This document shows positions 25,035 to 58,421 of a stretch of 64,000 bases of DNA, one piece after another. Made by a program: the position numbers and the translations under genes. Positions within the stretch are counted from its first letter, which is position 1. The number at the start of each line of letters is the position of its first letter. The stretch spans positions 124,001-188,000 of the IMG/VR virus record IMGVR_UViG_3300031997_000001; one strand, given 5' to 3'. The notes beneath the pieces were generated by a model that did no database searches, was not told the origin of the DNA, and saw only the letters and a program-made list of their open reading frames with translations.

Positions 25035-25385
25035 CTAGCAGTTGAGCGCGTCCTCGACGGCCTCCTTCGCGCTATCCAGCTCCGGCAGCCGGTCAGACAG
25101 GAACTTGCGAGCCTGTTTGACGACCTTCTTGCCGACCTTGGGGTCGCGCAGGTCGTGCTCGTCGTGGCGCGGCGCGGCTTTGTGCCAGGCCCAGATCAGG
25201 CGGCCGATCGCAGCCCTCTGGGACATTTTGGGTGCGGGCTTAGCCAGGAAGCCGGCCACGTCAAGCTCCATCAGAGCGTCATCTACCTTGTCCAGGTCGT
25301 CGTCGATGCTCTGGCACGCGATGTCGCGCCTGCTCGCAAAGAGCGTCGTGCCGTTACGGCTGTCGAGCTCTACTCGGTTCCTCAT
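25035..25385 (-). CDS. Hypothetical protein
   Basis: Coupled ORF. Confidence 0.65.
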   Translation of the reverse strand: MRNRVELDSRNGTTLFASRRDIACQSIDDDLDKVDDALMELDVAGFLAKPAPKMSQRAAIGRLIWAWHKAAPRHDEHDLRDPKVGKKVVKQARKFLSDRLPELDSAKEAVEDALNC

Positions 25386-25699
25386 GTCGGAATTCCTTTC
25401 ACAAACGGGAGTGGGCTCGCTGTCTGCATCGCCTGTTCAGCCACTTTGTTTGCCTGCTCTGCACTCTTGCATATGATGACGACGGTCGAATTCACGATAA
25501 CGTGGAATTTGGCATGTGAGAGGTTTTCAAAATTTGGCATCGAGACGATGGTGACATCCCGACGCGTCTCGAAGGCGGGCATATCCTTGTCCAGCGGGAC
25601 CAGGGTACCGGCAATCCTGATGGCAGGAGGTCCACCCGGCTCTAACTCGATGGGTCTGCCTTCTAGGTTCCTGCCTCCCAGATCGCCAAAAGTCGGCAT
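25382..25699 (-). CDS. Hypothetical protein with N-terminal FGDLGGR motif
   Basis: SD GGAGG. Confidence 0.65.
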   Translation of the reverse strand: MPTFGDLGGRNLEGRPIELEPGGPPAIRIAGTLVPLDKDMPAFETRRDVTIVSMPNFENLSHAKFHVIVNSTVVIICKSAEQANKVAEQAMQTASPLPFVKGIPT

Positions 25700-25708
25700 G
25701 CGGCCTCC

Positions 25709-26491
25709 CTAGAAAGCTGCCTTCAGCTTCTCGTAGTCCGCGTTCCGCGCCTTGTTGGCCATCATCTGGGCCAGCATCTTGCCCCAATCCTCTGCCTGCT
25801 TCAGGGCCTCCGCCATGTTGCATTTCCGTTCCTTCAGGACGAAGGGCGCAAAGCACTTGGCATCCCAAAGCCACGGCCACTGCTTGAAATACGAAATGAA
25901 GGCGAGCCACTTGTCGTCGCACCAGCTGGGCGTCCAGCAGGACGACCGGCAGATGAAGACGATGTCATAGGCGTCCTTGGGCGGGAGCTCCGTGGAAAGC
26001 TCGAATCTGCACGATTTCGGCACCTTCGGCCTGGGATCATCCTCCGGGTTCTCTTCCCGCCAGGGAGGATAGATCACGCGATATGACTGGATCAGGCCTT
26101 CATCCATCCCGAGCCTTGCCCAGTTCCCGCAGTCGAGCTGCTTGGACCGCCCATATCCGAAGTCGTGATGGGCATCGAAATTGACGACGTCGGCTTGGGT
26201 GGCCTTGTTCGCCTTGAGCCACTCATAGAGGCCCTTGTGGCTGTCAACGATGGCCAGGAACATCGGATGGCCATCCAGCGTCCGCTTCCAGAAGCCGTTC
26301 AACCGCTCCTCGGGGAGGACGTGGTCGATGGCCCGCTTCTTGTTGGTCATCCCTACGCTACCAGCACGGGTAGCCCAGAGCATGTCGTAGAAGAAGGCTT
26401 TGTCTTCCGAGTGCCCCCAGTCGTACTCGTCAGTCGACGGAAACGTCCAGTCCCAGTCGACAGAAAGGACGCGAAGGTGGGAAAGTTTCAT
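25709..26491 (-). CDS. UPF0489/arginase-fold metallohydrolase-like protein
   Basis: LSVDWDW; VDSH; VNFDAHHD; ICRSSCWTP. Confidence 0.7.
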   Translation of the reverse strand: MKLSHLRVLSVDWDWTFPSTDEYDWGHSEDKAFFYDMLWATRAGSVGMTNKKRAIDHVLPEERLNGFWKRTLDGHPMFLAIVDSHKGLYEWLKANKATQADVVNFDAHHDFGYGRSKQLDCGNWARLGMDEGLIQSYRVIYPPWREENPEDDPRPKVPKSCRFELSTELPPKDAYDIVFICRSSCWTPSWCDDKWLAFISYFKQWPWLWDAKCFAPFVLKERKCNMAEALKQAEDWGKMLAQMMANKARNADYEKLKAAF

Positions 26492-26510
26492 GATTCACCA
26501 AAGATAGCTT

Positions 26511-26873
26511 ATGAGTGGAAACGCTCCATGGCCGCAGGCGAAGTCAGCGGCCTTCTTTGTCCAGGCGCAAGTCTGCCGGTCAGCACAGGATCCCCTGCCT
26601 CAAACGGCAGAAGATGACGTAGCTCGTATTGCGTCGGTGATGGACAAGGCGCCTGCACAGCAGAAGAAGACGGCAGACGTCCGCTTGAATCCCGTCGCCA
26701 AGGAGAGGTTGCGGATGGCGGCCTTGTGCCCGAACGGGAAAGCGGCGACCCTGCTGGACCCGAATGCGACGGACGCGGCCACGGTCATCCAGCAGATGCT
26801 GGACAAGGGTTACAAGGTCATTGACCGGACCGGCCGCCCGAACGTCGCACCCCCGCCACCCAGGCTGCTTTAG
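26511..26873 (+). CDS. Hypothetical protein (lone + strand gene)
   Basis: Fills gap between - strand genes. Confidence 0.55.
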   Translation: MSGNAPWPQAKSAAFFVQAQVCRSAQDPLPQTAEDDVARIASVMDKAPAQQKKTADVRLNPVAKERLRMAALCPNGKAATLLDPNATDAATVIQQMLDKGYKVIDRTGRPNVAPPPPRLL

Positions 26874-26883
26874 CCGTCACGGA

Positions 26884-27196: not shown

Positions 27197-27508
27197 TTAT
27201 GCGGCTTCGATGACGAAGGCTTGGTAATCAGGGCTGGCAGGGCCCGGTTCTTTCTGTGTAGCGCTGGCTTCGACGTTGCCGGTCTTCTTGTCCTGGACCA
27301 GCGTCCAGTCGCCGTAGGACATGACCCACTTGAGCGACCAGTCCTCGGCTTGAGCCTCGATGCACTTGCCCCATTCAGCCTTGGGCGCATATTTCTCGAT
27401 GAGCTCAATCGCCCAGGCGAGGGCCTCCTGACACGGAAGCTTGAAGACGTCCCGCTTCTCGCAGAGGTTGCCTTGACTGAGCTTCGCGCGCAGGGTGAGC
27501 TGTTTCAT
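27197..27508 (-). CDS. Hypothetical protein
   Basis: SD GAGGTG. Confidence 0.6.
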   Translation of the reverse strand: MKQLTLRAKLSQGNLCEKRDVFKLPCQEALAWAIELIEKYAPKAEWGKCIEAQAEDWSLKWVMSYGDWTLVQDKKTGNVEASATQKEPGPASPDYQAFVIEAA

Positions 27509-27899
27509 TCGATGAGCACCTCTCCATACTGGGCTTTGGGATGTCATGATAGTGGTAGATGATCTTAACATTCATCTCGTCTAGAAATCTCAGCTTAATC
27601 GCCTTTAGGAACGGGACCGAGAAGTAGGGCGTGTCAGCCACGGACATAGCCAGCTTTCTGCCCCGGTAGCCAGACGTCGTCGTCTTGCCGACGAACTGCA
27701 TGTCGTCCTGTCCGCATCCGTGTTCTGCGGTACAGCTGACGCACGTGATCTCCGCGACCTTGCCGTCCTCCATCTCGTAGAGGGCGACCTCGCCGCAATC
27801 CGCCACGCACATCTTCTTGGAGAACCAGGCGTAGCGCATCTCCGCAGGATCTACGTCCTGAACTACGCGTCTGTTGCCTGGGTCTCCGAAGGTCGGCAT
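27405..27899 (-). CDS. Hypothetical protein with N-terminal FGDPGNR motif
   Basis: SD GGAGG. Confidence 0.6.
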   Translation of the reverse strand: MPTFGDPGNRRVVQDVDPAEMRYAWFSKKMCVADCGEVALYEMEDGKVAEITCVSCTAEHGCGQDDMQFVGKTTTSGYRGRKLAMSVADTPYFSVPFLKAIKLRFLDEMNVKIIYHYHDIPKPSMERCSSNETAHPAREAQSRQPLREAGRLQASVSGGPRLGD

Positions 27900-30612: not shown

Positions 30613-30613
30613 G

Positions 30614-31783
30614 TCAGTCCTTGTAGGGGTCCTCTTCGTCCTCGCCTGCCATCGCTACGCCGATCGGCGAGAGCTTGTGCAGGATGCGGATCGAAGCCTC
30701 ATGGTGAGCGAGGACCTCGGACAGCCGCTTGTAGCAGTGGGGCGACTCGTCGGTCCCGGCCCCGCGGAGCTCCACGTTCTCCCTCTTCACCCACTCCGTC
30801 ATCATCTCCTTGGAGATCTTCCCGCCCACGCGGGGCTGTCCCCACTTCTTGCGCTTGCCCGCAGCCTCGTTGCGACCCATGACGCGGCCCGCGCCGTGGA
30901 CGGTGGAGTAGAGGGCGACCTTGCTCTCGTCGGAGTCTACGCCTTCCACGATGACGGAGCCGTCCCCCATGCTGCCACCGATGAAGCTCCTCTGGCCAGG
31001 GAACGCAGGCGTCGCGCCCTTGCGCACTACCCAAAGCGGTGCGCCGTCGTGCGTCTCCAGCCAGCTGAAGTTATGGTGGTTGTGGACCTCATCGATGATG
31101 TTGGCACCAAGGAGCGCAGCCACCTTGCCGCAGACCCAATCCCGGCCGGCGTAAGCGTAGCGGCCGGCGAGGCTCATGCAGACAAGATAGTCCTTGCCAA
31201 GCGCGGACTCGGCATCGAAGGTGACAGGCTCGACGTTGACGCCGTCCTTGCCGCCGCCTGCCTTGATGAAGTAGGTGGCGATCTTGTGGCCCAGGCCCCG
31301 TGAGCCGAAGTGGACGCCGATCCAGACGCGCCCCGCCTCGTCCTCGAAGAGGTCCACGAAGTGATTCCCCGAGCCGATCGTGCCGAGCTGTTCGCGGGCC
31401 AGGACCTTTAGGGTACTGACGGCTCCGACGTCCCAGGCTGGACTGTTAAAGAGCGGATGCTCGACCTCTTCCTTGTTCTTCCGGCCGATGCCGAAGGAAA
31501 GGCTGTGCCAGATGTCGTCCATAATCTTGGCGATGTTCTTCCGCACTTCCGCCACGGGGGCGTCGGTAAGAACAGCCTTGTTCCCGCAGGCGATGTCGTA
31601 CCCGACCCCGGACGGGCTGATGCGCCCGTGGTAGGCGACGACGCCGCCGATAGGCACGGCGTAGCCGAGATGATGGTCGGCCATAAGAGCCACGCGGGCA
31701 GCCGTGCGCTTGCACGTCCGCATCTGCTCCACCGCGTTGTCCTGCGGGACGCCCCAGACCGGAATGCCGTCGATCATCTGCAT
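30614..31783 (-). CDS. rtcB: RtcB family RNA ligase
   Basis: MADHHLGYAVPIGGV; GYDIACGN; GTIGSGNHF; HFGSRG; HNHHNF; HGAGR; DESPHCYK. Confidence 0.95.
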   Translation of the reverse strand: MQMIDGIPVWGVPQDNAVEQMRTCKRTAARVALMADHHLGYAVPIGGVVAYHGRISPSGVGYDIACGNKAVLTDAPVAEVRKNIAKIMDDIWHSLSFGIGRKNKEEVEHPLFNSPAWDVGAVSTLKVLAREQLGTIGSGNHFVDLFEDEAGRVWIGVHFGSRGLGHKIATYFIKAGGGKDGVNVEPVTFDAESALGKDYLVCMSLAGRYAYAGRDWVCGKVAALLGANIIDEVHNHHNFSWLETHDGAPLWVVRKGATPAFPGQRSFIGGSMGDGSVIVEGVDSDESKVALYSTVHGAGRVMGRNEAAGKRKKWGQPRVGGKISKEMMTEWVKRENVELRGAGTDESPHCYKRLSEVLAHHEASIRILHKLSPIGVAMAGEDEEDPYKD

Positions 31784-31793
31784 CTGGCTTCTC

Positions 31794-32129
31794 CTAGAGC
31801 TCTCTGCTCAGCGCATCCTTGAGGTGGAATTCGGTCTCCAGCAGGGCGCGCTCATTGAAGCCTGTATATGCCGAGACACGCTGGACCTCGATCGGAGCCT
31901 TGGCGACCTCAGACAGAAGAAGGAGTCCGTCCGGGCTCATCTCCAGCACCTTGCAGAGGAGGATCGTCATCTTGGCGAACGGGGGATTGCATTTCCCGTT
32001 CTCGATGCCAGACAGGTATCCCTTGCACGTTCCAGATCGCTCAGCAAGTCGCTCGAGCGTCATGCCCCTATGCTTCCTGATCTCATGGAGCACCTGGCCG
32101 AACCGCTTTCTGGCGCTGTTTTTCATCAC
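31794..32129 (-). CDS. XRE-family HTH regulator
   Basis: RGMTLERLAERSGTCKGYLSGIENGK. Confidence 0.85.
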   Translation of the reverse strand: MMKNSARKRFGQVLHEIRKHRGMTLERLAERSGTCKGYLSGIENGKCNPPFAKMTILLCKVLEMSPDGLLLLSEVAKAPIEVQRVSAYTGFNERALLETEFHLKDALSREL

Positions 32130-32151
32130 ATTGCCTCCTTGCTCATGTCGT

Positions 32152-32187
32152 ATTGTACCAGAAAGGGGGAATTAGGAGGGAAGAATT
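32152..32187 (-). promoter_or_regulatory. Extended -10 promoter for XRE-rtcB unit
   Basis: AATTCTTCCC-16-CTGGTACAAT. Confidence 0.6.
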
Positions 32188-32194
32188 AAAGAGT

Positions 32195-32659
32195 CCTCGG
32201 CGACGGACGACGGCTCGCTTGAACGGTTCCTTGTAGCCTAGCCGCTTTTGGCTTGTCCACGGTGCAGGCGGTGTGATCATTCCCAGCGGCGTGCGGGTCG
32301 AGTAAAGCTCCGCCATGCGCGGATCTCGACACGCCCCTGCTAGGCCCAATCACATACCAGGATTTGCACCCGGCTGAACTCTCACTCTCTTTGAGGAGAG
32401 ACCATCTACTGTTTTCACCTGCTTGTGTCCGATCCCATTACTCTGGCTGGGACTTGCCGCCCAGCGTGGTACGGGGGAAGTGTCCAGAGCTGGAGGCCAC
32501 CGGGCGTCCTCCTAAGGGCAGACCCGCGCTGGATAACTCGTCATGCGATCCGCTGTTGATCAGACAACGAAACGCATCTGGTATGGACCGAGTTTCTCCA
32601 CCACGCAACGGCAACGATGGGCCGTGCCAAGAGGAACCAATGCGCGTCCGCCACCGAGG
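32195..32659 (-). ncRNA. Large structured non-coding RNA (~465 nt), family unknown
   Basis: 15-bp closing stem pairs fully (with G-U) only on - strand; about 10 nested helices; T-loop-like hairpin; no credible ORF. Confidence 0.75.
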
Positions 32660-32673
32660 CTATGTCCTCCTGA

Positions 32674-33272: not shown

Positions 33273-33300
33273 CTTATTCCCCTAAGAATTAGCCACCCTC

Positions 33301-34431: not shown

Positions 34432-37400
34432 GCCTCCTCCCCGTCGACCCTGATCTTGAGCGAGACCGGAGCGTCTTCAGATGCCAGGAAGGCCTGATAG
34501 TTCTGAAGCGTGGCCGTCGGCTCGAGCTCCTCCCGCAGCGAATCCCGGATCTCCTCGTACTTCTGCTTCTTGGCGATGGCATCCTGAATCCGGGGCAGGA
34601 ACGTCTCCTCGTAGAACTTCTGTCCCAGCCGCCTGATGATCTCCCGGTCGTACATCGCGTCCGTTTGCGGGATGCCGGAGAGCTCCTTCCATGCGAAGAG
34701 GCCCGGGATCATCTCACCCTTTGGCGCGGCCTTCTTGCACGCGCAGTGCTTGGCCGCCTCGACGGCAGGGGAGGGCTTGTTCTCCAGGGCTCCCCCTCCC
34801 ACCTTCAAACGCCTACCGCCGGCGACGTGCTTGGCCAGCCAGAGGGCGTCGCCCTTGGCGCGCGAGACGGGCATCCCCTTGCTGACGTTCTTGACGAAGT
34901 TGTACACCGCGAAGACGTCAAATCGGCGAAGCATGGGAACCTCCTAGATTTCGGCGTCCCGCTCGTCCTTCTTGGTGAAGAGCTTCCGCTTCTTGCGGGG
35001 AAGCTCCGCAGCGGGAAGGTTTTCCTCCTGCGGGAAATCCTTGGTATTGATCGCACCGGACGCATCCAGGGGATGCAAGCTCGAAGTGGCCTCGTGGGAG
35101 CACGAAGCCTCCGGCTTCTTGTCCAGATCGCCGGGCGTCTTGGCTCCGGGCCGGTCGACCAGCTTCTTGTGCTGGGCGTTCCACAGCATGCTGCCTGCAG
35201 CAGGGTGGGCCTTCATGGTCTTGATCTGCTCTTCCGCCCACTCGGTGGCGGAGACCGCACAGTTGTCTCTGTCCAGCAACGGGTAGAAGGTCCCGGCGTA
35301 AAGGTTGCCTTCCCAGTAGAGGGCCCATTTCTGTCCCTCGTACTGGACCAGCAGGCTGCCATCCTTGGAATGGCAGGCCGTCAGCTGAGGTTGCGTCCAG
35401 CTGGGCCAGTTGGCGTGCTCGACCGCGGGCCACGCAGTGATTTCAGGCATATGACCTCCTTGGGTGCTTTGTCGGCCTCACGCCAAAATCCGCACCGCTT
35501 GCAGGCATAGTATCCATCGGCGTTGATCTTGAGCTTCCGGCCGCAGTTGAAACAGCTTGCCTGCTTCTGCTCGGTCATAGGCTCATCTTCTTGACCCAGG
35601 CCTCAGCAGCCCGCCGGTTGGGGAACGACGCGTGCAATTCCCCGTCGGCCATGACGACAGCGGGCATCTCCGAACGGCCGCTGACTCGGATGGTGAACTT
35701 CGGGTGCCGGTACTTCGGGTGCGAGTACAGGACCTTGTGCGTCTTGGTATCGATGATCCTGACGATGCACTCGTCCATGATGGCTTGACCGCCTGTCGAC
35801 TTGGAATTGTGGATCATCAGCGGAACCTTGACCGGCCCCATGCTCCGTCCGACGGTCCCTTCGACATCATGCTCCTCCAGCCAGTCAAGCCCGGCCTTCT
35901 TGGTGTGGCCGTACCGGACACGGATGCGACGAGCGTGCGGCCAGACTCTGCAGTTTTCAAGGATCCTCACGACTTCGGGCGGCGTCCGGGGATCGTAGCT
36001 GGTTTCGATGGGTTTCATTTCAGGTTCCTGACTTTCCTCTTGGAAATGGCCATCTGGGCCACTAGCCTGCGACGTGCCTTGATATACCACCGATCAAGCG
36101 CCTTGAGCTTTTTCGCGTAGGTTGCCTGGAGCTCGCACTCAGCCCTGTTGAAGTGGCGCTCGATCGACCGCAACATCTCGGCCTTCGTGTTGTCCTTGGT
36201 CTTATCGAGCCTGTGCAGTTCCCAGCCGACCTTGTGGCACGGACACATGCAAGCCCACTCTTCGTGAGACGCCCAGAGCTTGAAGATCTGGTGTCCGCAC
36301 TCTAGGCATCTCTTTTGCCAGGCCTTCTTCATTTGGCCTCCTGAACCGCGACGCAGGCGACATAGACGACGTCGCGGTCCCGTTTCTTGAGACTGGTGAT
36401 GACCTCTTTGCAGGCCTGCGGGAACGCGCCGTCGCGATCTGCCTCCACGACCACCGCGCCCTTCTCGAGGACCGAGTCGTCGTCCTCGAGGCGGACCTCG
36501 TAGAGCACCTTGAACTTGCCCATGGTCTTCCTCCCCAGCTTGCACATGCGCTTGTACCAGTGCCACTCTTTCTCCAGCTGGATCAGTACGACGCCTAGCA
36601 CGACGCCCAGAAGGATGTCGAGTAAGTGTTCCATGGTGTCGGTGTCTCCTAGAAGTAATCGTCGAGTGTTGGAACGACCGAGAATCCCTTCTTCCGCAGC
36701 GTTGAGCAGACCCTCCCATACATGACGCAGGTCGCCTCGTCGTCGGTGTTGAGGCCTCCCCGCGAGTCCTGTCCGTCCTTGACTTCGACGTTCTCGACAT
36801 CCGTGTCGGCCGGGTCCTTGACCGGATCACGATCGGCAGTCCGGAACCCGCAGACCCACAGATGGTTGTCCCGCTTGGCCCCCTTCGCGGTCAATATCAG
36901 GTTCTCCGTGTCGACGTCCCCTCCCGGTTCCGAGACTTCGACCTTGGCGGCTAGAGGCTTTAGCAATTCGACGACGTCTTTCGTCTTCCAGTGCGTCACG
37001 TTCGCTCTCCTAGAAGTCCTCGATGCTGAGAATCCTGCTGCCCATGCTGCCAATGGCGTTGGGCGACTTGGCCAGCTTGTCTTCCGCGATCTTCCTGATG
37101 ATGGTCTGGCGCATCTCAGAGGAGAGCTTCACCAGTTTCACGGCAGCGGCGATTCCCACGTCGACGACGGTGAATTCCTCCACCCATGCGTCGCGAAGCG
37201 TCTCCCACTTCTTGTAGGCTTCCTTGTACTTGGCGCGACGCACCACCTTCGTGCCCTGGCTGACTCCCTGGAGGCTGATTATGTCCAGCGCAAAGTCCAT
37301 CTCCCTGGGTCGGTCGCCAGCGAAGGTGCACGCCAGTTGGACGACAGCGCTTTGCGCGGAAATCCTGCTGTCGTAGGGCCGCGCCTGCTCTATGTCGACG

Positions 37401-44535: not shown

Positions 44536-45300
44536 CTAGATGTCCAGAACCCTGGACCCGAGGTTGCCGAACTTCTGCAGGACCTGCTTGGACGCGCCGG
44601 TCTCGGCTTCCAGCGAACCCCAGTCGAAGTTGCTGGACGTCGTCGACGGACCGTCGTCGTCTCCCAGCCTGCGCCCACCCAGGTCGCCGAACTTCTTGAG
44701 GGCGGCGATGACGGAAGCGGCGATCCGCTTGAGCACCATCCGCACGCCGGCGACCAGCTTGTTCTCCACGTCCCATCGGCGGTCGAAGGCCATCGTTCCG
44801 CCGGCCTTGCTCTCGGCGATGGACTTGAGCTGCCAGGCCTGGTCCTTGTTGATGACCAGGTGGGTGACGTCCTTGGACCAGGAGTTCATGACCTCGGCGT
44901 AGACGAACTTGTTGGCGTCGTAGTTCTGCAGGATCTTGAGGGTGCCCGCGTCCACCTGGGGACCGAAGGGCTTCTTCTTCGACAGCTGCAGGTCGACGAA
45001 CTCGAAGCGGGCGATCTTGTACTGGTGGCCCAGCGTCTTAGCCACCTCTTCCTCCTGACGGAGCTCGCCGATCTGGGTCTCGACGTACTGACCCTCCTTA
45101 CGCGGCCGGAGCTTGTCCTTGAGCTTCTTGGCCAGGAACTCATCCAGCTCGGACTCCGTGGCGAAGTCCAGGACCTGTTCCGCGGACGATCCGCCGACGC
45201 GTCCCCATGAGAGGGTCAGCTTGAGCCCGTCCCTCTCGGTTTTGTAAAACTTGTTGTGTTGTGCGCTTTTGCACAGGTAGTACTTCACTTCTTTCGCCAT
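44536..45300 (-). CDS. WGR-domain protein
   Basis: HNKFY...LSWGRVG..Q; C-terminal FGxLGxR repeats. Confidence 0.8.
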   Translation of the reverse strand: MAKEVKYYLCKSAQHNKFYKTERDGLKLTLSWGRVGGSSAEQVLDFATESELDEFLAKKLKDKLRPRKEGQYVETQIGELRQEEEVAKTLGHQYKIARFEFVDLQLSKKKPFGPQVDAGTLKILQNYDANKFVYAEVMNSWSKDVTHLVINKDQAWQLKSIAESKAGGTMAFDRRWDVENKLVAGVRMVLKRIAASVIAALKKFGDLGGRRLGDDDGPSTTSSNFDWGSLEAETGASKQVLQKFGNLGSRVLDI

Positions 45301-46568: not shown

Positions 46569-47413
46569 TTCAGCCACTCCTTGAACTGGTCGTAGGTGAC
46601 CACGTCCAGCCCGAGTTCCATGGCAGCCATTGCCTTGTTACTGCCGGTGCCGAGCGCCTTGACGATCAGGTGCGTGCAGTTCTTGGACACGCTGCTCCTG
46701 ACGACGCCGCCCAGGGACTCGAACTTCTCCTGCTCGGCTCCCGTGGGCCGGACCCCCGTAAAGACGATGGCCCGACCGGCCAGCTTGCCGCCCGTTGCCA
46801 CGGGCTTCGCCTTCTCGGCCTTCGCAATCTTGACGACCTTGAGCAGCTTCTTGATGAGCGGCAGGTTGGCCTCCACGCCGGCGGCCACGCCCTCCCGGAT
46901 GGCAGGTCCGAGAGTTTGGCACTTGCGGATGAATGCCGGATCCGAGAACTTCTCGGTCGTGTCCAGCCCGTTGTCCTCCACCATGTGCTTCGCGGCCCGG
47001 GTGCCCAGAAAGCGAACACCCAAAGATCCAAAAAATTCGTGAAGCTGGAGTTCCTGGGTCTTTCCGATCTCGTCCAGGATCTGCTTGGCGCGATCCTCGC
47101 CGAGTCGACCATTGCCCACTTTGAGATCTGCCAACTGCTTTTGGGTGAGCGCGTAAAGATCAGCGGGATCGCGGACCAATTCGCTATCCCACAGGGCGAG
47201 CTCAACCTCATCTCCCAAGAATTTGATATTCAGCGATTTTCTCCAGCGACGGACCTTCCTGATCAGACGCCCTTCGCATTCCTCATTCTGACAGAAGAGG
47301 GCTGGCCCGACACGCACAAGCTTGGACTTGCAAGCGGGGCATGAAGTAGGGATGGCGATGGGCTTGTCAAGCCGCTCGAGCTCGACCATCTTACCCTTGC
47401 ATTTGATTTGCAT
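46565..47413 (-). CDS. ligA: NAD-dependent DNA ligase C-terminal half (Zn finger, HhH, BRCT)
   Basis: PTSCPAC..FCQNEEC; LNIKFLG; DPADLY; LGVRFLG; IVFTG..GGVVRSSVSKNCTHLI; own GGAG SD. Confidence 0.85.
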   Translation of the reverse strand: MQIKCKGKMVELERLDKPIAIPTSCPACKSKLVRVGPALFCQNEECEGRLIRKVRRWRKSLNIKFLGDEVELALWDSELVRDPADLYALTQKQLADLKVGNGRLGEDRAKQILDEIGKTQELQLHEFFGSLGVRFLGTRAAKHMVEDNGLDTTEKFSDPAFIRKCQTLGPAIREGVAAGVEANLPLIKKLLKVVKIAKAEKAKPVATGGKLAGRAIVFTGVRPTGAEQEKFESLGGVVRSSVSKNCTHLIVKALGTGSNKAMAAMELGLDVVTYDQFKEWLK

Positions 47414-47451
47414 GAGGAATTGCTCCAGTATGTTAAAGGCAAACATAAAAC

Positions 47452-49381: not shown

Positions 49382-49569
49382 GCCAGTGTCTCCAATTCCC
49401 GACGCAGTTCCGTCTCCCCCATGTACTGAATGTTGGAGAGGTAGGAGTACAGCTCATCGTCGCTCAGCCCATCCCTGTTCGGCTTATAGTGCTCGGTCAG
49501 GAGCTTCCGGACCTCGGTGATGTCCAGTTCCTTCTGGGCCAGAAGCTGCTTCGCCTGATCGCTGGTCAT
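49378..49569 (-). CDS. Hypothetical protein
   Basis: SD GGAGG, coupled. Confidence 0.6.
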   Translation of the reverse strand: MTSDQAKQLLAQKELDITEVRKLLTEHYKPNRDGLSDDELYSYLSNIQYMGETELRRELETLA

Positions 49570-50772: not shown

Positions 50773-51729
50773 CTAGATTTCCAGCTTCCTGACGTTCAGG
50801 ATCCGCTGGGCCAGCTCCTCGGCCGACTCGTTGAGCTCCTTGACCTTCACGTCGGGGACGATCTCCCCGTACATCTCGATCCGGTCCTTGAGCCTCTTGA
50901 CCTTCCTGAGCCGGGCTTCCATCCAGGTGATCTTGCCCTTGTCGGTGAGGTCCGGGGACAGCTGATCGACTTCCTCGGCCAGCCCCTTCACGACGGATTC
51001 CAGCTCCTCCAGCACGGACCGGCCGAGGGTCACCTTGGAGACTTCGGCATCCGGCACGGGGAGATACTCGAAGCGCGCGTCGTTGGTATTCGGAGAGAGC
51101 TTCGACACCAGAGTCGAAACCTTCTCCACGACGCCGTTGAACTGCGCCGGGACGAAGTAGACGTTGCCCTGGTCCCGCAGGGTGATCAGGTCCGCCTCCT
51201 CCTCGATGATGCGCTGGAGGTAGCGGGTTATGTCGCTCGAGTTGTACCGGACCTTCTCCTTCTCGAACAGCTCGAGGACCAGCTTGTTGATCGCGGCGTT
51301 GGCGGTGTAGCCGGGCATCTCGGAGATGAGGGCCTCGGCGAAGTTCTTCGTCTCGTAGTACTTGCTCTTGGACACGATGACCCGAGTCTCGGTCGTGTAC
51401 TTGAGCTCGCCGGACCCGACGGAGGTGCCGGTCAGCTGTTCAGCCGTGAACTGGAAGACGATGAAGTCGTCGTCCTCGCTGACCCGCCGGATGATCCGAC
51501 CTTCCTCCAGGTTGCGCAGGGCGCGGATGAAGGCACTGCGGTAATTATGTTCGCGAGCGTATTTGGTCGGGAGTCCGCTTTCCTCCAGCAGCTTGGTGAA
51601 CTCGTCCTTGGTGATCGAGACGTTCCTCACGTTCCAGAACACAACCGACCCCAAGATCGGGCAGTCCAGACCTTTCATCTTGAGGAAGAATTGTGCGCGT
51701 TTCTCCTGAGCAGTCATGTGCTCCTCCAC
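50773..51729 (-). CDS. DUF3150-like protein associated with the AAA module
   Basis: LGSVVFW; LRDQGNVYFVP; coiled C-terminus ending RKLEI. Confidence 0.6.
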   Translation of the reverse strand: MEEHMTAQEKRAQFFLKMKGLDCPILGSVVFWNVRNVSITKDEFTKLLEESGLPTKYAREHNYRSAFIRALRNLEEGRIIRRVSEDDDFIVFQFTAEQLTGTSVGSGELKYTTETRVIVSKSKYYETKNFAEALISEMPGYTANAAINKLVLELFEKEKVRYNSSDITRYLQRIIEEEADLITLRDQGNVYFVPAQFNGVVEKVSTLVSKLSPNTNDARFEYLPVPDAEVSKVTLGRSVLEELESVVKGLAEEVDQLSPDLTDKGKITWMEARLRKVKRLKDRIEMYGEIVPDVKVKELNESAEELAQRILNVRKLEI

Positions 51730-52455: not shown

Positions 52456-52674
52456 TCACTGCTTGACCTGCTGGCTGGCCTGTGTCATTTCTCTGATCCA
52501 GTCGACTGTCAGGTCTCCATGCTGCGCCCGCTGGGTCGGCTCGTCGCAGCCCTGCTCGACGGCAAGGCCGAGGGCGCGAATGACCTCGAATGGGACGAAG
52601 GCGCAGACGCCGCCGACCTTGTCGAAGCCGTTGACTCGGACGAACTTTCCCCCGTTCAGGTTGTTGACCATCAT
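52456..52674 (-). CDS. Hypothetical protein
   Basis: Coupled ORF MMVNNLNGG. Confidence 0.5.
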   Translation of the reverse strand: MMVNNLNGGKFVRVNGFDKVGGVCAFVPFEVIRALGLAVEQGCDEPTQRAQHGDLTVDWIREMTQASQQVKQ

Positions 52675-52859
52675 CCGTTCCCCTGCTTGACCTGGTTCTT
52701 GTCGGCCTGGACCACGTGGTCCATCCCCTTGTGCCGCTCCTCGATCTTGCCCAGGCTCTTGGCCAGATCCTCGGTGAAGGAGGCCGTACCCTGACCGTTG
52801 GCCCCCTCTGCATGGATCTTGACTTCCCCGTCGTTGATCTTGAGCACTATTTCTTTCAT
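52671..52859 (-). CDS. DUF2997-like protein
   Basis: MKEIVLKINDGEVKIHAEGANG...TEDLAKSLG. Confidence 0.7.
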   Translation of the reverse strand: MKEIVLKINDGEVKIHAEGANGQGTASFTEDLAKSLGKIEERHKGMDHVVQADKNQVKQGNG

Positions 52860-53331: not shown

Positions 53332-54879
53332 CTACGCGTCCACCTTGCGGGACTTCTGCTCCTCTTCCTTGCGGTGGTTCGCGTTCTGGGCGAAGTCGCT
53401 GGCCCACTTCTTCATCGACTCCAGGTCGCCCCTCCGGGACCGGGAGAGGGGCACGGTCCGCAGGATGGCGGACAGGATGTGCATGTCGTTGAGCTCCTCC
53501 TTGCGGTAGAAGCCGGTGTAGAGGCCCGAGATCACGGCCTCCTCCAGCTCCGCCCCCGAGTACCCCTCGCTGTTGGAGGCGCACTCCTTGAGGCCCTGGG
53601 CGTCGAACTTCTTGGGATCGCGGCCCCGCTTGGTGATGTGGATCTTGAGAATCTCCTCCCGCTCCTTCTCGTCCGGGAGGTCGACGTAGAAGATCTCATC
53701 GAAGCGGCCCTTCCTGAGCAGCTCAGGCGGGAGTCCGTCGATCTTGTTGCACGTCGCCACGATGAAGACCGGCGCGGTCTTCTCCTGCATCCAGGTGATG
53801 AACGACCCGAAGACGCGGGCGCTCACTCCGGAGTCCGTCTGGCCCGAGCTGGACATCCCAGCGAAGGCCTTCTCGATCTCGTCCACCCACAACACGCAGC
53901 GGCCCACGGCCTCTGCCGTCTGGATGGCGACCCGCATGTTCGCCTCGCTCTGGCCGACCAGCCCGCCGAAGACGCGTCCCACGTCGAACTTGATGAGCGG
54001 GACCCCGAAGTTGGCGGCGCACGCCTTCGCCGCCAGGGACTTGCCCGTTCCCGGGATGCCCGTGAGCATCACGCCACGCGGGGCGGGGAGGCCGTACTTG
54101 CGGGCGTCCTCGGTGAACGCCAGCTTCCTGATGCTCAGCCACTCCTTGAGCACCACCAGCCCGCCGATGTCGTCCATCCCCTGCTTGGCAGGGTACCACT
54201 CCAGCACGCCCGACTTCTTGATGGCGTTGGCCTTCTCGGACATGACCAGCGTGGAAATCTGGACCTTGGACTTCGGGTCGTCCTTGGTGGACTTCTTCCA
54301 GTCCACCACGCCCTTGGCCATGGCGTTCTCCGCCTCGACCGTGGTCAGGCCCATGCAGGCCTCCACGATGGCGAAGACCTCGTCCTTCGCGACGTCCCCC
54401 ACGACGGTCTTGTTCTCCGTCACGAACCGGTCGATCATCGTGCCGATGATCGCCCTCTCGGGGAGGCCGAACTCCAGGAGCGTCACGTCGCGCTGCAGCC
54501 CGACGGGCAGCTCGTTGAGCGGGCTGATCATGATGAGCGTCTTCTTGGCCGTCTTGAACTCGCGGGCGATGTCCCGGATGAGCCGCGCGATCTTGGGCAC
54601 CTGGAAGAACGGGTGCAGGTCGCGGAACAGGAACACCACCTTCTCGCCGAACGTGGTCGTGCTCTCGGCGCCGCGGATCTTCGCGAGGGCGGCGACCGGG
54701 TCGTCAACCTCGTCGATGGTCTTGCCGTTGGCGTCGATGAAGCCGTCCGTGTGGCTCCACACGACCACCTTCCACTTGAGCTCCTTGAGGGTGTTGGCGA
54801 GCTCCAGCTCGACGCGCGCCTCCTCGGGGCTCACGACCATGAGTACCGGATAGCGGGCCTTGATGTAGCTGTCAAACAT
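53332..54879 (-). CDS. Ycf46-like AAA+ ATPase
   Basis: IKARYP..EEARV; GIPGTGKS; LWVDEIEK; PPELLRKGRFDEIFYVDLP. Confidence 0.9.
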   Translation of the reverse strand: MFDSYIKARYPVLMVVSPEEARVELELANTLKELKWKVVVWSHTDGFIDANGKTIDEVDDPVAALAKIRGAESTTTFGEKVVFLFRDLHPFFQVPKIARLIRDIAREFKTAKKTLIMISPLNELPVGLQRDVTLLEFGLPERAIIGTMIDRFVTENKTVVGDVAKDEVFAIVEACMGLTTVEAENAMAKGVVDWKKSTKDDPKSKVQISTLVMSEKANAIKKSGVLEWYPAKQGMDDIGGLVVLKEWLSIRKLAFTEDARKYGLPAPRGVMLTGIPGTGKSLAAKACAANFGVPLIKFDVGRVFGGLVGQSEANMRVAIQTAEAVGRCVLWVDEIEKAFAGMSSSGQTDSGVSARVFGSFITWMQEKTAPVFIVATCNKIDGLPPELLRKGRFDEIFYVDLPDEKEREEILKIHITKRGRDPKKFDAQGLKECASNSEGYSGAELEEAVISGLYTGFYRKEELNDMHILSAILRTVPLSRSRRGDLESMKKWASDFAQNANHRKEEEQKSRKVDA

Positions 54880-54900: not shown

Positions 54901-56342
54901 CTAACGCAATTCGCTCTTGTCCTTGGCTTCGAAGATCTCGAACTTGCGGCGGCTGTCCTTGTCCTCGTCTTCCGACCTGTCGCCGATGCACCACATGTTG
55001 GCATCGCCTGGGCGATCGTCTGAGGTCAGAACGTATGAGCAATCGCTCCACTTCGCGCCGAGGTTCTTGAGCGCGGACTCGGCTTCCTGTTTGGTGCCAT
55101 AGCCGACGAAGAAGGTCGGCGGCTTGTCCAGGTCGCTGAGGATGGCTGAACCGCTCCTGTTGATCTGGTACTCCACGATCACGAAGCTCATGGTCTCCTT
55201 CCTAATGGACGTGGGGAACGGAGCCTGCGTGCGCCAGGGCATGCTCTATCTGGTCGACGTGCCGGTCGTACTCGTCCTCGGTGATGTCGAAGGTCCTGTT
55301 GCACAGGCCGCAGAGGGCCGTGTGCTGGATGCCGGAGCCCGTCACGTCCTCGGCTTCGATGTGGACGGTGATGTAGGCGCCGCTGGCATGGCAGTCTTCG
55401 AACGGGCAGATGATGTGCTTTTCGTCGCTCATTAGGCCTCCAATACGCGGCCACCCACCTGACCGAACGGGGCTGACCGCGACGGCATCGAAGTAAGGGT
55501 GAAATTCACATCCACCTTCACGACCTCGCACAGGTCCACGTAGGCCTGGCGCTTGGCCTTCTTTTGCTCCCAAGTGAGACGGTAAGCCTGAATCCCGTAT
55601 GGAGTGGCGCCTGCGGCAAAGATGGCTGCACGAGCCGACTCCTCACCCTTGTATTGTCTGGCGTCCCAGAGGTCGGACACCCACCCAGATGCGTCCTGGC
55701 ACCCGACGTCGGCCGTCTTGGGAAGCCAGCGCTTGGATGGCTTGTGCCGGACCATGAATACCGTGGTCTTCACCGTCCCTCCTCCACGGACACGATCTCG
55801 ATGTCGACGCCTTGGAAGCCCAGTGCCTCGATCTGCTCGCCTGCCTGTTTCATGGCCTTCGTCTCGGCGTCCGCGCAGGACTGGGCCTTGAGGCATACGG
55901 CCTTCGTGCCGCCGGTCAGCACTAGCTCGACGTGGAATTTCTTCTCCACTTGTGGAACGCACGGCGTCTCGGGTGTGAAGTGCCGGGTCAGGATCTCCCT
56001 GATGTCGGCAACGTCCCATTCGCCGTCTCGGTGGACGGGAGCGACAAGCGCCTTGATCTCGCGGGCGGCGGCTTCATGCGGTGTCAGGCAATTGGAGCCG
56101 ATCTGTTGGTCCGCGTACAGCCATGGCCTTGATGCGCACGTCTCGATGTCGAGAGTTTCGATGATCTGCAGGGCCTCCGCCACCGCAGGGTTGAATTCCA
56201 GCTCTGGCAAGCCTCCGCCATCGGGAACCTGTACCGGCCCATCCGCCCATTCCTCTCCGGGTTTTCCTGCGACGAGCCAGACGAGGCGGAGGAGCCGTTC
56301 GTCCAGGACCTTCCGCTTGGGATTCAGGATCTTGTTTGTCAT
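54901..56342 (-). other. Four small hypothetical genes (54901-55191, 55202-55432, 55432-55773, 55770-56342)
   Basis: Tiled ORFs with SD. Confidence 0.55.
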
Positions 56343-56533
56343 CAGTGTCCCAGTTTCTGCTGGTTGTTGGCCTGCGGCTGCTGGTAGAACTCGCTGGTCT
56401 TCTGGTCGTCCTTGACCGTGCCCAGCGCGTTCTCCAGCGTCTTGGTCGCGTCCTTGCAGGCGGTGCCCTTGAGCCCGTCGACCGAGATCTTGAGGCCGCC
56501 CTTGTTGTCGATGATCAGCGTGATCGTGTGCAT
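56342..56533 (-). CDS. DUF2997 family protein
   Basis: ITLIIDNKGGLKISVDGLKGTACKDATKTLENALG...TSEFYQ. Confidence 0.8.
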   Translation of the reverse strand: MHTITLIIDNKGGLKISVDGLKGTACKDATKTLENALGTVKDDQKTSEFYQQPQANNQQKLGH

Positions 56534-56563
56534 CGGTCAGGCTCCTGTGCTGGGGGAAGTCGC

Positions 56564-57019
56564 CTAGTACTTGACGAACTGGAGCTTGACCTCGCCCGTC
56601 GGGAGCTTGGTCTGCGTGCAGGTGTAGCCCTGGGCCGTCATTTTCTTCTTGGCCACCTCGGCGACGTACCCCTTCACGATGTTGCTGCAATTGTCCCCGG
56701 CCAGCGCCTGCAGTCCGTGTCCGCCGGCGTAGAAGTCCCAGACCAGCACGTGGCCTTTCCCGTTGGGGTTCTTGCAGACGCCGATCTCGTACGCCTGCGA
56801 GTTGCCGGGGACGCCGATGGCGTGCTCGCACTTGCCGTAGTCCTCGGGCTTGATCCCGTGGTGGTAGGCGGCGTTCGCCCCGTGGTAGTCGTTGACCCAC
56901 GAACCGTACCACTTGTGATGCTTCTGGCCTTCCTTCCACTGGAGGCCCGACGCCTTGACCGCCTTCTTGAGGGCTTCCAGATCGAGCACGTCCAACTCGA
57001 GTCGAGCGACATGAGACAT
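56564..57019 (-). CDS. DUF1257 family protein
   Basis: MSHVARLELDVLDLEALKKA...YEIGV...WDFY. Confidence 0.8.
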   Translation of the reverse strand: MSHVARLELDVLDLEALKKAVKASGLQWKEGQKHHKWYGSWVNDYHGANAAYHHGIKPEDYGKCEHAIGVPGNSQAYEIGVCKNPNGKGHVLVWDFYAGGHGLQALAGDNCSNIVKGYVAEVAKKKMTAQGYTCTQTKLPTGEVKLQFVKY

Positions 57020-57280
57020 TTAGGCCTCCTTGGGGAACGGGATGTTGTGCTTGACGAGCCAGGCGTGCTCGATTGCGAGCGCCTTCGCCCGGGTCCTGAA
57101 CGGTCCGATTCGGGGGCCGCCGACCGGCTTGAGATTGACGACCCACCGGACTCCTGCCGGCTCGACGTGGCTGGCCCGCCGGATTTCGGCCTTCCCCAAG
57201 GAGAGAAGCGGGGTCAGCTCGTCGGCATAGACCATCCGCAGCGAGCCGTCGTTGCCGATGACCATCTCATGCTTGGACAC
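57020..57280 (-). CDS. Small protein typical of DUF1257/DUF2997 clusters
   Basis: IRRASHVEP..W..PVGGPRIGPF..R..AL..E..WL. Confidence 0.7.
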   Translation of the reverse strand: MSKHEMVIGNDGSLRMVYADELTPLLSLGKAEIRRASHVEPAGVRWVVNLKPVGGPRIGPFRTRAKALAIEHAWLVKHNIPFPKEA

Positions 57281-57388
57281 TATCCCTCCTTAGTTGCTGC
57301 TTCCAAGCTTCTAGGCGCAGCTTGCCCTGCACACAGACGAATTTGTCGCCAACGCGCTTGACTTGAATTGGGGGCATCCCGTGGTACT

Positions 57389-58421
57389 TCACTTGTCCCC
57401 CTCCATGGTCAGGTCGTCGGCGGAGGCCTTCGCGTCCGCCAGCGCGCTGCGGATGGGACCGTTCGGGTCGCTCGGCTCCACTGCGTCCTCTCCCAAGAGG
57501 ATCCGCTGGCCCAGGTTCCCGAGGGTCTGGAACAGCGGCAGGCCGAGGCACTTCTCGATGACCGCCTTGCCGACGTCCTTGCGCAGCTTCTCGGGAAGCG
57601 TGTCCTGTCGGATGTAGATGATCTTCTTCTTTTCCTCACCGGGGGAGGTGCTGACCTCCATGGTGATGAATTCCGGCGCTCCCGGTTCCAGGACCGAGGC
57701 GGTCTCGTTCAGGGTCGGGAGACGACGGAACTTCGGCGGAACGCGTTTGGGCATCTGGCCTCCTAGGTGGCATGAATCACGACGGACCAGGCCTTCCTTA
57801 CCTCAAGACTGGAGAAGTAGAAGCAGTCGCTTCCACCCACGCGCTCGAGGGACTTCACGACGAGCGATTTGTACAACTCCATTGAGCGGAGTGCGGCTAA
57901 CGCGTCCTCCGGGCTGGATGTCTTGGACTTGACCTGGATGGCGATATGGACCGTAGATCCAGACGCCAGTGTGATGCGCCAGATGTCGCAGTGCTTGTCT
58001 TCCATGGCTGTCCTCAATTCACGAGGGACTGGGCGCGCTTCAGGAGTTCCTCATCCTGGGCGACCTGTCCAAGCGACTGCATGATCTCCTGCGTCGGCGG
58101 GCTGCCTTCGTCCTTGGCCTTGGCGATGAGAGCCTTCGCCTCGGCGACGTGCTGGTCGAACCTCACCTTGAGCTTGGCCACGTCCTCCGGGCTGGGCGGA
58201 CACACGAGACTCGCGTACCGGGAGGGAACGAGAGAGGGGACGACGGTAGCGAAGATGTTGCCGCCGCCCAGGATCTTCCCCAGCTCCCCCAGCATGCCTT
58301 TGATCTCCAAAGGCGATGGCATTCCCTCGGGCTCCTCGCCGCCCCCGAAGGCGCCCCCGTATTCGCCGTTGGGGTCAGGCCCCTCGAACTCTTCTGGCTC
58401 GTCCGGATCTTCCATGTTCAT
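57389..58421 (-). other. Three hypothetical genes (57389-57754, 57763-58005, 58014-58421)
   Basis: ORFs with SD after promoter. Confidence 0.6.

What the first reader, a model, noticed from the sequence alone, without database searches (positions are those of the whole stretch)
25382..57754. Shared short linear motif [FLI]G[DNS][LPM]GxRx[LV] in five unrelated proteins
Seen: MPTFGDLGGRNL (25699), MPTFGDPGNRRV (27899), IGSMGSRILSI (C-terminus of 37010-37477), FGDLGGRRL and FGNLGSRVLDI (WGR protein) and LGNLGQRILL (57389-57754). Most are at termini. The DUF3150-like protein and AAA ATPase end in RKLEI and RKVDA. Inference: a docking tag recruiting diverse early proteins to one hub, possibly the Ycf46-like AAA+ machine.
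Basis: partly seen in the sequence, partly recalled or inferred. Interest (0 to 1): 0.6.

Follow-up and report, generated by a model that had tools for sequence, protein, structure and literature searches.

The report
Conserved terminal docking peptide in phage
A nine-to-eleven-residue peptide (hydrophobic-G/A-x-hydrophobic-G-x-R-x-L-D/E-hydrophobic) sits at the very ends of at least ten otherwise unrelated proteins of an uncultivated 235-kb phage and is kept in their distant relatives, so it is almost certainly a portable protein-docking tag, but the partner it binds is still unknown.

Summary
I found five more. One is in the window: FGQVGGRVLEA* at 55432-55773. Four proteins elsewhere on the 235-kb viral contig carry the others.

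The motif is a peptide feature, not a DNA repeat, because the codons differ. It is enriched (6 vs 0.01 and 10 vs 0.39 in shuffles; a cross-validated PSSM gives 5 vs 0.7). It is terminal: 8 of 11 copies lie within 10 residues of an end (P = 1.3e-5).

It is conserved in orthologues of three families. In the WGR protein family (104 homologues, 21-53% identity) both tail copies are kept, and the Arg is present in 102/104 and 103/103 sequences.

The AAA ATPase and the DUF6744 protein carry a conserved C-terminal half-motif, R-x-L/V-D/E-hydrophobic. WGR, AAA, DUF6744 and DUF2997 form a gene neighbourhood kept in divergent relatives.

The proposed hub (the AAA) is not established: the co-fold gave no verdict, and the AAA carries the tail itself. 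AlphaFold2 docks the WGR protein's last copy onto its own body, which makes that domain a candidate receptor.

This is a new motif of a known kind, and its receptor is unresolved.

The parts
25664..25690 (-). Motif copy FGDLGGRNL, residues 4-12 of the 105-aa protein 25382-25699 (N-terminus MPTFGDLGGRNL)
   Evidence: No Pfam or PHROG family. The gene is absent from the mosaic relative L024.
27864..27890 (-). Motif copy FGDPGNRRV, residues 4-12 of the protein 27405-27899 (N-terminus MPTFGDPGNRRV)
   Evidence: Orthologues at 56-93% identity keep MP[TV]FG[DE](P/NL/SL)G[NE]R[RH][VI].
37028..37054 (-). Motif copy IGSMGSRIL, five residues from the C-terminus of the 155-aa protein 37010-37477 (...IGSMGSRILSIEDF*)
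   Evidence: Orthologues at 63-99% identity keep PNAIG[SN]MG[SG]RIL[SN][IV]ED and L024 has IGNMGGRILSIEDL*.
44665..44691 (-). WGR protein tail, motif copy 1 (KKFGDLGGRRLGDDDG), at the end of a long helix and before an acidic linker
   Evidence: Arg210 is present in 102 of 104 family members. AF2 pLDDT here is about 73.
44545..44571 (-). WGR protein tail, motif copy 2 (QKFGNLGSRVLDI*), two residues from the C-terminus
   Evidence: Gly248 98/103, Arg250 103/103, Leu252 96/103. AF2 pLDDT 85-88, modelled as docked on the protein body.
44536..45300 (-). WGR-domain protein, 254 aa: N-terminal WGR domain, beta-rich central domain, long helix, tail with two motif copies
   Evidence: Pfam WGR E = 2.6e-7. 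Structural match to WGR domains: 2ra8 Z 10.6, PARP1 Z 9.1. More than 100 full-length homologues.
55441..55467 (-).
   Evidence: A 79-aa protein in the divergent relative L027 ends PFGGIGIRVLE*.
57497..57523 (-). Motif copy LGNLGQRIL at residues 78-86 of the 121-aa protein 57389-57754, followed by an acidic, Pro-rich tail
   Evidence: No family hit.
53335..53349 (-). C-terminal half-motif RKVDA* of the AAA ATPase (gene 53332-54879)
   Evidence: Orthologues end GRKLQIDEG* (L027, 57% identity) and RRTVDV* (L029, 49% identity).
50776..50790 (-). C-terminal half-motif RKLEI* of the DUF6744 protein (gene 50773-51717)
   Evidence: Orthologues end PRKLDIEE* (L027, 46% identity) and PRTLEL* (L028, 42% identity).
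56342..56533 (-). DUF2997 protein, a member of the conserved WGR/AAA/DUF6744 neighbourhood. A second, weaker copy lies at 52671-52859.
   Evidence: Pfam E = 4.8e-13 and 5.6e-5. DUF2997 is also found next to WGR in L028, L029 and L030.
47006..47032 (-). Regex match FGSLGVRFL in the C-terminal half of NAD-dependent DNA ligase. It is a helix-hairpin-helix element, not a copy of the tag.
   Evidence: It aligns with LLYALGLPGVGE of T. filiformis LigA, 1dgs. It is internal, in a folded domain.

Best explanation
The motif is a genuine short linear docking peptide: [FLI]-[GA]-x-[LMVIP]-G-x-R-x-[LVI], usually followed by D/E and a hydrophobic residue. At C-termini the chain often ends one to five residues after the motif. 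It is ancestral to the tail of a phage WGR-protein family, where it occurs twice, separated by an acidic linker. In this phage lineage it has been grafted onto the extreme N- or C-termini of at least nine other, unrelated small proteins. A shortened C-terminal form, R-x-L/V-D/E-hydrophobic-COOH, ends the AAA ATPase and the DUF6744 protein of the same conserved gene neighbourhood.

Most likely mechanism (inferred): the exposed peptide inserts its three hydrophobic side chains and the invariant Arg into one pocket of a shared receptor. In that way it gathers these proteins into one assembly built around the WGR / AAA / DUF6744 / DUF2997 module, which lies among DNA- and RNA-end repair genes (PolX-LigD phosphoesterase, NAD-ligase, RtcB, helicase).

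The receptor is not identified. The only computational pointer is that AlphaFold2 docks the WGR protein's own last copy on its body. This suggests that the central domain of the DNA-binding WGR protein is a receptor and that other carriers could dock there in trans. The AAA module and a host protein remain open.

Shown: existence, enrichment, terminal position, conservation, two-copy architecture, conserved neighbourhood. Inferred: binding, a common receptor, assembly.
For: - Enrichment and terminal bias.
- Different codons at each copy, so selection acts on the peptide.
- No similarity among carriers outside the motif.
- Conservation of the fixed positions, with variable x positions, in orthologues of three families at 51-66% identity.
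- In 104 WGR homologues (21-53% identity) the Arg, Gly and Leu of both copies are among the most conserved columns of the whole protein, while the linker is variable.
- Position 2 (G or A) of copy 1 covaries with position 2 of copy 2 (MI-APC rank 34 of all pairs), as expected if both copies fit one co-evolving site.
- The flanks are Pro/Ser/Gly/acid-rich linkers, seen directly in the sequences.
- WGR, AAA, DUF6744, DUF2997 and NAD-ligase are neighbours in five divergent contigs.
- AAA and DUF6744 orthologues keep the C-terminal half-motif.
- AF2 with a 104-sequence alignment gives pLDDT 85-88 to the last 14 residues of the WGR protein. Residues 221-235 lose confidence (76-82 down to 56) when residues 236-254 are removed.
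Against: - No binding partner has been shown. The single co-fold (AAA with the WGR tail) gave no verdict.
- The fully unbiased de novo motif test was only marginal.
- In the WGR family the last copy may be an intramolecular structural element rather than a free ligand.
- Copy 1 did not re-dock when copy 2 was deleted in silico.
- Outside this lineage, carriers other than WGR were seen only once: the 79-aa protein of L027. L028, L029 and L030 show the full motif only in WGR within the 10-20 kb fetched.
- Covariation of the two copies could also come from intragenic conversion.
Confidence: 0.6

Rival explanations
1. The tag is a recognition or recruitment signal for the Ycf46-like AAA+ ATPase, acting as an adaptor-type docking site on its roughly 230-residue N-domain or as an unfolding/degradation tag. 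This would work like SHP-box proteins recruiting Cdc48/p97, or like terminal degrons read by ClpX.
For: - The AAA gene is kept next to WGR in at least three of the five divergent contigs (L027, L029 and the P0162 contig); a 507-aa gene cut by the end of L030 may be a fourth, and L028 shows none.
- Two carriers (55432-55773 and 57389-57754) flank the DUF2997 genes just upstream of the AAA.
- Terminal position and tandem copies are typical of AAA+ adaptor motifs and degrons (own knowledge).
- In phages L338C and HJ05 the roughly 210-aa gene right after the AAA ends RRAVKL* and RNRKLKL*, a similar R-x-hydrophobic-x-L tail.
Against: - The co-fold of AAA with the WGR tail gave no verdict (neither for nor against).
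- The AAA carries the half-motif at its own C-terminus, conserved in orthologues, so it looks like a client.
- L338C and HJ05 have the AAA (38-40% identity) but no full motif, no WGR and no DUF6744.
- The register differs from the SHP box.
Confidence: 0.2
2. The peptide is a cis-acting structural cap or latch that packs against each carrier's own fold, or mediates self-association. It is not a ligand for one shared receptor.
For: AF2 places the WGR protein's last copy on its own body with pLDDT 85-88. Weak covariation links helix 236-243 to strands around residues 98-100, 144-147 and 173.
Against: - The same 9-11 residues occur at the extreme N- or C-termini of proteins with unrelated sequences, separated from the body by Pro/Ser/acid-rich linkers. 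One peptide is unlikely to fit many different folds in cis.
- WGR copy 1 is as conserved as copy 2 (Arg 102/104) yet is not modelled as docked (pLDDT 73 and 58).
Confidence: 0.1
3. The tag is a capsid-targeting (cargo-loading) peptide like those of encapsulins. It would dock on the inner face of the HK97-fold major capsid protein, so that the carriers are packaged and injected with the DNA.
For: - The T. maritima encapsulin cargo-loading peptide ...GGDLGIRKL (string confirmed in five papers) scores 12.5 bits on the phage motif PSSM. Only the motif copies and the ligase HhH segment score as high (2 in 10,000 proteome 9-mers).
- Encapsulin tags are also terminal, linker-separated and sometimes repeated (own knowledge).
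- Two small ORFs resembling pieces of T4 gp23 carry the motif or a degenerate copy.
Against: - No encapsulin, major capsid, portal or terminase gene was detected on the contig, so no receptor could be tested.
- Position 6 is small or polar here but a buried Ile in encapsulin tags (own knowledge).
- The carriers include an AAA ATPase and lie among early-type replication and repair genes.
- The resemblance was recalled from one peptide among many known motifs.
Confidence: 0.07
4. Chance or compositional artefact of a G+C-rich genome rich in Gly, Arg and Leu codons.
For: A fully de novo gapped-pattern search with refinement reached 7 proteins, and 1 of 40 shuffled proteomes did as well.
Against: - Shuffles keep composition and give 0.01-0.7 expected against 5-10 observed.
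- Terminal bias, P = 1.3e-5.
- Conservation in orthologues, and near-invariance of Arg, Gly and Leu in 104 WGR homologues.
Confidence: 0.03

Closest known systems
Encapsulin family-1 cargo-loading (targeting) peptides, e.g. T. maritima GGSENTGGDLGIRKL
   Same: A short Gly-containing peptide with spaced hydrophobic residues and a basic residue. It is placed at a protein terminus after a flexible linker, is portable between unrelated cargo proteins and is sometimes repeated. GDLG-x-R-x-L matches six of the fixed positions.
   Different: No encapsulin or capsid gene was found here. Position 1 is Phe/Leu/Ile and position 6 is small or polar rather than Ile. The Arg is invariant here, whereas most encapsulin tags have GSL there (own knowledge). 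The carriers include an ATPase and DNA-repair-neighbourhood proteins.
SHP box (FxGxGQ[RK]L) of Ufd1, p47, Derlins and Dfm1, which binds the N-domain of the AAA+ ATPase Cdc48/p97
   Same: An F...G.G.R.L-type peptide, often near a C-terminus and in two copies in Dfm1, used by unrelated proteins to recruit a classic-clade AAA ATPase. The function is confirmed; the consensus is from my own knowledge. A classic AAA ATPase is encoded in the same neighbourhood.
   Different: The register differs: Gly at +1 and +4 and Leu at +8 here, against Gly at +2 and +4 and Leu at +7. The system is bacterial/phage. The fold of the AAA N-domain is unknown, and the co-fold gave no verdict.
Hub-binding terminal motifs of replication and repair proteins (beta-clamp QL[SD]LF, T4 gp45-binding tails, SSB C-terminal tip, PIP box)
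   Same: The logic is the same: one short terminal peptide on many unrelated DNA-metabolism proteins, binding one hub. The genomic context here is DNA/RNA repair.
   Different: The sequence is unrelated, with no Gln and an invariant Arg. No DnaN or gp45 clamp was detected on the contig.
PARP-type WGR domain proteins and bacterial WGR/MolR-like proteins
   Same: The N-terminal domain of the main carrier is a WGR domain by Pfam and by structure (Z 10.6 and 9.1). Like PARP1 it sits among nick- and end-repair enzymes.
   Different: It has no catalytic PARP domain. The central beta domain has no clear structural match. The two-copy tail is not, to my knowledge, described for any WGR protein, and nothing was found in the papers searched.

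Membership tests
Short linear docking motif (SLiM), generic definition | Short (3-12 residues), with a few fixed positions and variable positions between them | tested here: met
   Nine to eleven residues. Hydrophobic-1, G/A-2, hydrophobic-4, G-5, R-7 and hydrophobic-9 are fixed; positions 3, 6 and 8 vary.
Short linear docking motif (SLiM), generic definition | Occurs in otherwise unrelated proteins, in exposed or disordered, often terminal, regions | tested here: met
   No similarity outside the motif. 8 of 11 copies are within 10 residues of an end. WGR linker pLDDT is 58. Disorder of the small carriers was not modelled.
Short linear docking motif (SLiM), generic definition | Fixed positions conserved in orthologues while the flanks drift | tested here: met
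Short linear docking motif (SLiM), generic definition | Binds a defined pocket of a globular partner | tested here: inconclusive
   AAA with WGR tail: no verdict. AF2 docks the WGR copy 2 in cis.
Encapsulin cargo-loading peptide | Encapsulin (Linocin_M18) or other HK97-fold shell gene encoded with the cargo | tested here: not met
   PF04454, PF05065 and a full-length PF07068 are absent from the contig. The contig may be incomplete.
Encapsulin cargo-loading peptide | Sequence matches the tag consensus (GSLxIGSL+ / GDLGIRKL) | tested here: inconclusive
   The T. maritima tag scores 12.5 bits on the phage PSSM, but positions 1 and 6 differ.
SHP box / Cdc48 N-domain ligand | Consensus FxGxGQ[RK]L in that register | tested here: not met
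   The register here is F-G-x-hydrophobic-G-x-R-x-L. The SHP consensus is from my own knowledge.
SHP box / Cdc48 N-domain ligand | Partner is an AAA ATPase with a peptide-binding N-domain | tested here: inconclusive
   An AAA with a roughly 230-residue N-domain of unknown fold is present. The co-fold gave no verdict.
Sliding-clamp-binding motif | Clamp gene present and QL[SD]LF- or gp45-type consensus | tested here: not met
   No DnaN or gp45 hit. The sequence is unrelated.
ParB-type N-terminal ParA-activating peptide | A ParA/MinD-type ATPase partner is encoded | tested here: not met
   PF13614 is absent.
WGR domain (the main carrier protein) | Match to the Pfam WGR profile and to the WGR fold | tested here: met
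   E = 2.6e-7, above the cut-off. 2ra8 Z 10.6 and PARP1 Z 9.1.

The most novel reading that the evidence does not exclude
The tag is the phage counterpart of the encapsulin cargo-loading peptide. It would dock on the inside of the HK97-fold capsid shell, so that a WGR DNA-end binder and a set of small proteins are packaged and injected with the genome. That would be a direct mechanistic link between phage internal-protein packaging and encapsulin cargo loading.
Probability: 0.07. Interest if true: 0.9.

Novelty: new variant of a known kind. Interest (0 to 1): 0.62.

Why it matters
Peptide tags that gather many proteins on one hub organise replication, repair and proteolysis in cells (clamp-binding motifs, SSB tails, SHP boxes). 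They are almost unexplored in phages.

Here a single, easily recognised tag marks a set of about a dozen otherwise unannotated proteins of an uncultivated jumbo phage. It ties them to a conserved WGR / AAA / DUF6744 / DUF2997 module that has no known function and sits among nick- and end-repair enzymes.

The tag gives a direct experimental handle. A peptide pull-down would find the receptor and so assign a role to several domains of unknown function at once. The tag could also serve as a portable recruitment tag.

If the receptor is the WGR protein, this would be a PARP1/XRCC1-like damage-sensing scaffold without ADP-ribosylation. If it is the capsid, it would link phage protein packaging to encapsulins.

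Tried and rejected
- DNA-level repeat: rejected. Codons differ at every copy and the flanks are unrelated.
- Chance: rejected (and orthologue conservation). My fully de novo pattern test was weak (searches were preliminary).
- Ligase match at 47006-47032: rejected as a helix-hairpin-helix element.
- Complex prediction of the AAA (515 aa) with the WGR tail (residues 190-254): scores 0.00 and 0.01, no verdict. This is not evidence either way.
- In-silico deletion of copy 2. Copy 1 stays at pLDDT 72/57, so there is no sign that it takes over the cis site.
- Search for a hub on the contig. No encapsulin, HK97 or T4 capsid protein, portal, prohead protease, terminase, gp45 or DnaN clamp, ParA or DUF1257 by Pfam six-frame search. 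PHROG scans of 30 large proteins found no head genes.
- Close relatives. None in INPHARED phages or IMG/VR for the WGR protein. None in the phage collection for DUF6744.
- Phages L338C and HJ05, which share the AAA (38-40% identity): no terminal full motif.
- Foldseek and VIA searches with the WGR model matched only the WGR domain. The Atlas look-ups were uninformative.
- Literature: nothing on this motif. DUF2997 and DUF1257 are mentioned only in passing.
- One search was a mistyped reference.
- Not used: the reads tools, any alternative genetic code.

Full report
**Source.** The window is bases 124001-188000 of a single 235,458-bp viral contig from a JGI metagenome, Ga0315278_10000011. G+C is 50-63% across the window. 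From about 13 kb to the window's end almost all genes lie on the minus strand. I called about 324 genes with a codon-usage and ribosome-binding-site heuristic. That gene list is my own and is crude.

**Observation.**
- MPTFGDLGGRNL and MPTFGDPGNRRV are true N-termini. Each follows an ATG preceded by an AGGAGG-like site.
- IGSMGSRILSIEDF* ends the protein 37010-37477.
- The WGR protein (44536-45300) has FGDLGGRRL 42 residues from its end and FGNLGSRVLDI* at its end.
- LGNLGQRIL lies at residues 78-86 of the 121-aa protein 57389-57754.
- Relaxed patterns and a PSSM add FGQVGGRVLEA* (55432-55773). Outside the window they add a 134-aa protein with FGQIGGRIL and a C-terminal FGTFPVRHLEA*, two adjacent proteins ending LGKMGGRKVDLT* and IGELGNRIISF*, and a 257-aa protein with FGKMGARIK at residues 10-18.
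- One regex match, FGSLGVRFL in the C-terminal half of NAD-ligase, aligns with the LLYALGLPGVGE helix-hairpin-helix of a solved LigA. I discount it.

**More than chance?**
- Both patterns were written after seeing the data, so I also trained a PSSM on the WGR family alone (four peptides) and scanned the rest of the proteome. Five sites reach 12 bits, against 0.7 expected and at most 3 in 200 shuffles.
- A fully de novo gapped-pattern search ranks this motif first, but it is not decisive on its own. It reaches 7 proteins, and one of 40 shuffles also reached 7.
- Position is highly non-random: 8 of 11 copies lie within 10 residues of a terminus, P = 1.3e-5.
- The copies use different codons and have unrelated flanks, so the unit under selection is the peptide.
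- The carriers share nothing else by BLASTP. Two of them may be remote paralogues.

**Conservation.**
- The 51%-identical WGR orthologue keeps both copies (FADVGGRSLD and FAGLGSRTLDLDL*) while the linker diverges.
- Orthologues of 37010-37477 down to 63% identity keep PNAIG[SN]MG[SG]RIL.
- Orthologues of 27405-27899 keep MP[TV]FG..G.R.[VI], with a one-residue insertion in two of them.
- An exhaustive HMMER search found more than 100 full-length WGR homologues at 21-53% identity. Most tails visibly show two copies.
- In the 104-sequence alignment, Arg210, Gly248, Arg250 and Leu252 are at least 90% conserved, on a par with the core of the WGR domain. The linker between the copies is the least conserved part.
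- The family consensus is K-F-[AG]-x-[LVM]-G-x-R-x-L-[DE]-[LI]. Position 2 of the two copies covaries.
- So the motif is old, and the WGR tail is its probable source. In this phage it also appears on many other proteins.

**Half-motif and neighbourhood.**
R-x-[LVIM]-[DE]-hydrophobic-COOH ends 5 of 324 proteins against 0.2 expected.
- AAA orthologues end GRKLQIDEG* and RRTVDV*. DUF6744 orthologues end PRKLDIEE* and PRTLEL*.
- In five divergent contigs the WGR gene lies within a few kb of various combinations of this AAA, DUF6744, DUF2997 and NAD-ligase.
- In the window the region also encodes a LigD-phosphoesterase/PolX fusion, RtcB, a helicase and a ligase-like protein. This is a nucleic-acid end-repair setting.

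**Structure.**
- AlphaFold2 with the 104-sequence alignment gives a confident model (mean pLDDT 89.6). It has an N-terminal WGR domain, confirmed by 2ra8 (Z 10.6) and PARP1 (Z 9.1), a beta-rich central domain without a clear match, and a long helix ending in copy 1 (pLDDT 73). A poorly defined linker follows (58), then a short helix plus copy 2 at pLDDT 85-88. Copy 2 is therefore modelled as packed on the body.
- Removing residues 236-254 lowers confidence of 221-235 to 56 and leaves copy 1 unchanged.
- I could not inspect coordinates.
- The model hints that the WGR body has a site for the motif. It does not show trans binding.

**Which hub?**
- The single co-fold allowed (AAA with the WGR tail) gave no verdict.
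- No clamp, ParA, encapsulin, capsid, portal or terminase gene was detectable. The only hits were two small ORFs resembling pieces of T4 gp23. One carries the motif twice and the other carries a degenerate copy.
- Phages L338C and HJ05 share the AAA and DUF1257/DUF2997-like neighbours but lack WGR, DUF6744 and the full motif. The gene after their AAA does end in R-x-hydrophobic-K-L.
- The receptor is therefore unresolved. My rough ranking is the WGR central domain, the AAA module, a host protein, then the capsid.

**Comparison with known motifs.** The peptide works like a hub-docking motif.
- It resembles the T. maritima encapsulin cargo tag GGDLGIRKL.
- In a different register, it resembles the SHP box that recruits Cdc48 (consensus from my own knowledge).
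- It fails defining features of both: no shell gene, and a different register.
- I found no description of it in the papers searched.

**Verdict.** This is a real, conserved, portable terminal peptide, and most likely a docking tag. The specific hub is not.

Noticed in passing
window 46565-49381 (minus strand), with a plus-strand ORF at 47452-48312: The NAD-dependent DNA ligase is split into two ORFs: adenylation+OB at 48230-49381 and Zn/HhH/BRCT at 46565-47413. About 0.8 kb between them holds a plus-strand ORF with a weak LAGLIDADG match. The 96%-identical relative L001 has one 661-aa ligase. The PDB holds a 'DNA ligase subunit B' (9hu3_B) that matches the C-terminal half.
   Followed up: partly
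genome 122360-122764 (+) = L017:12360-12764; genome 212121-212501 (-) = L019:7121-7501: Two small ORFs match separate pieces of the T4 major capsid protein profile: Gp23 positions 3-49, the VQPM region, and positions 149-198. No full-length capsid, portal or terminase gene was found on the 235-kb contig. The first ORF carries the motif twice and the second has a degenerate copy, TFSVIGRRYLD. From memory, the first piece corresponds to the Gol region of T4 gp23.
   Followed up: partly
window 30614-34431: A nucleic-acid end-repair cluster: RtcB RNA ligase (30614-31783) and a fusion of LigD 3'-phosphoesterase with a PolX/Pol-beta-like polymerase (33301-34431). A helicase (39596-40702) and a ligase-like protein (49569-50141) lie nearby.
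   Followed up: no
window 27405-27899: After about residue 120 this protein departs from all its orthologues, which end ...IPKPTTGEILTE*. It runs on over the next gene (27197-27508). This looks like a frameshift or assembly error in this contig.
   Followed up: partly
window 25382-25699 compared with L024:10214-10288: The last 25 residues of this tagged 105-aa protein match the end of the neighbouring gene's orthologue in relative L024, which lacks the tagged gene altogether. This suggests a recent rearrangement that created the gene.
   Followed up: no
genome 76810-88026 (-) and 90427-96663 (+) (L014-L015): Two giant proteins (3738 and 2078 aa) carry hundreds of collagen-like QGQQGWQG repeats and match many tail-fibre PHROGs. 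The tagged protein at 215090-215605 has a short stretch of the same repeat.
   Followed up: no
whole contig, six proteins: A second recurrent peptide, SG-x-I-A-S-G-x-x-G, turns up in six proteins in the de novo scan. One copy lies directly before the tag of 215090-215605 (AGEIASGPIGELGNRIISF*).
   Followed up: no
genome 118292-119857 (+) = L017:8292-9857: A 521-aa ORF with atypical codon usage was not picked by my gene caller. It combines a Mom-family/GNAT-like C-terminal domain with a weak nuclease-like match, and sits between two unannotated genes near the tail-gene block.
   Followed up: no
L021:21638-22276 (phage L338C) and L032:12853-13479 (phage HJ05): In both cultured phages that share the AAA ATPase, the roughly 210-aa gene immediately after it ends in R-x-hydrophobic-K-L (RRAVKL*, RNRKLKL*). 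This is reminiscent of the half-motif.
   Followed up: no
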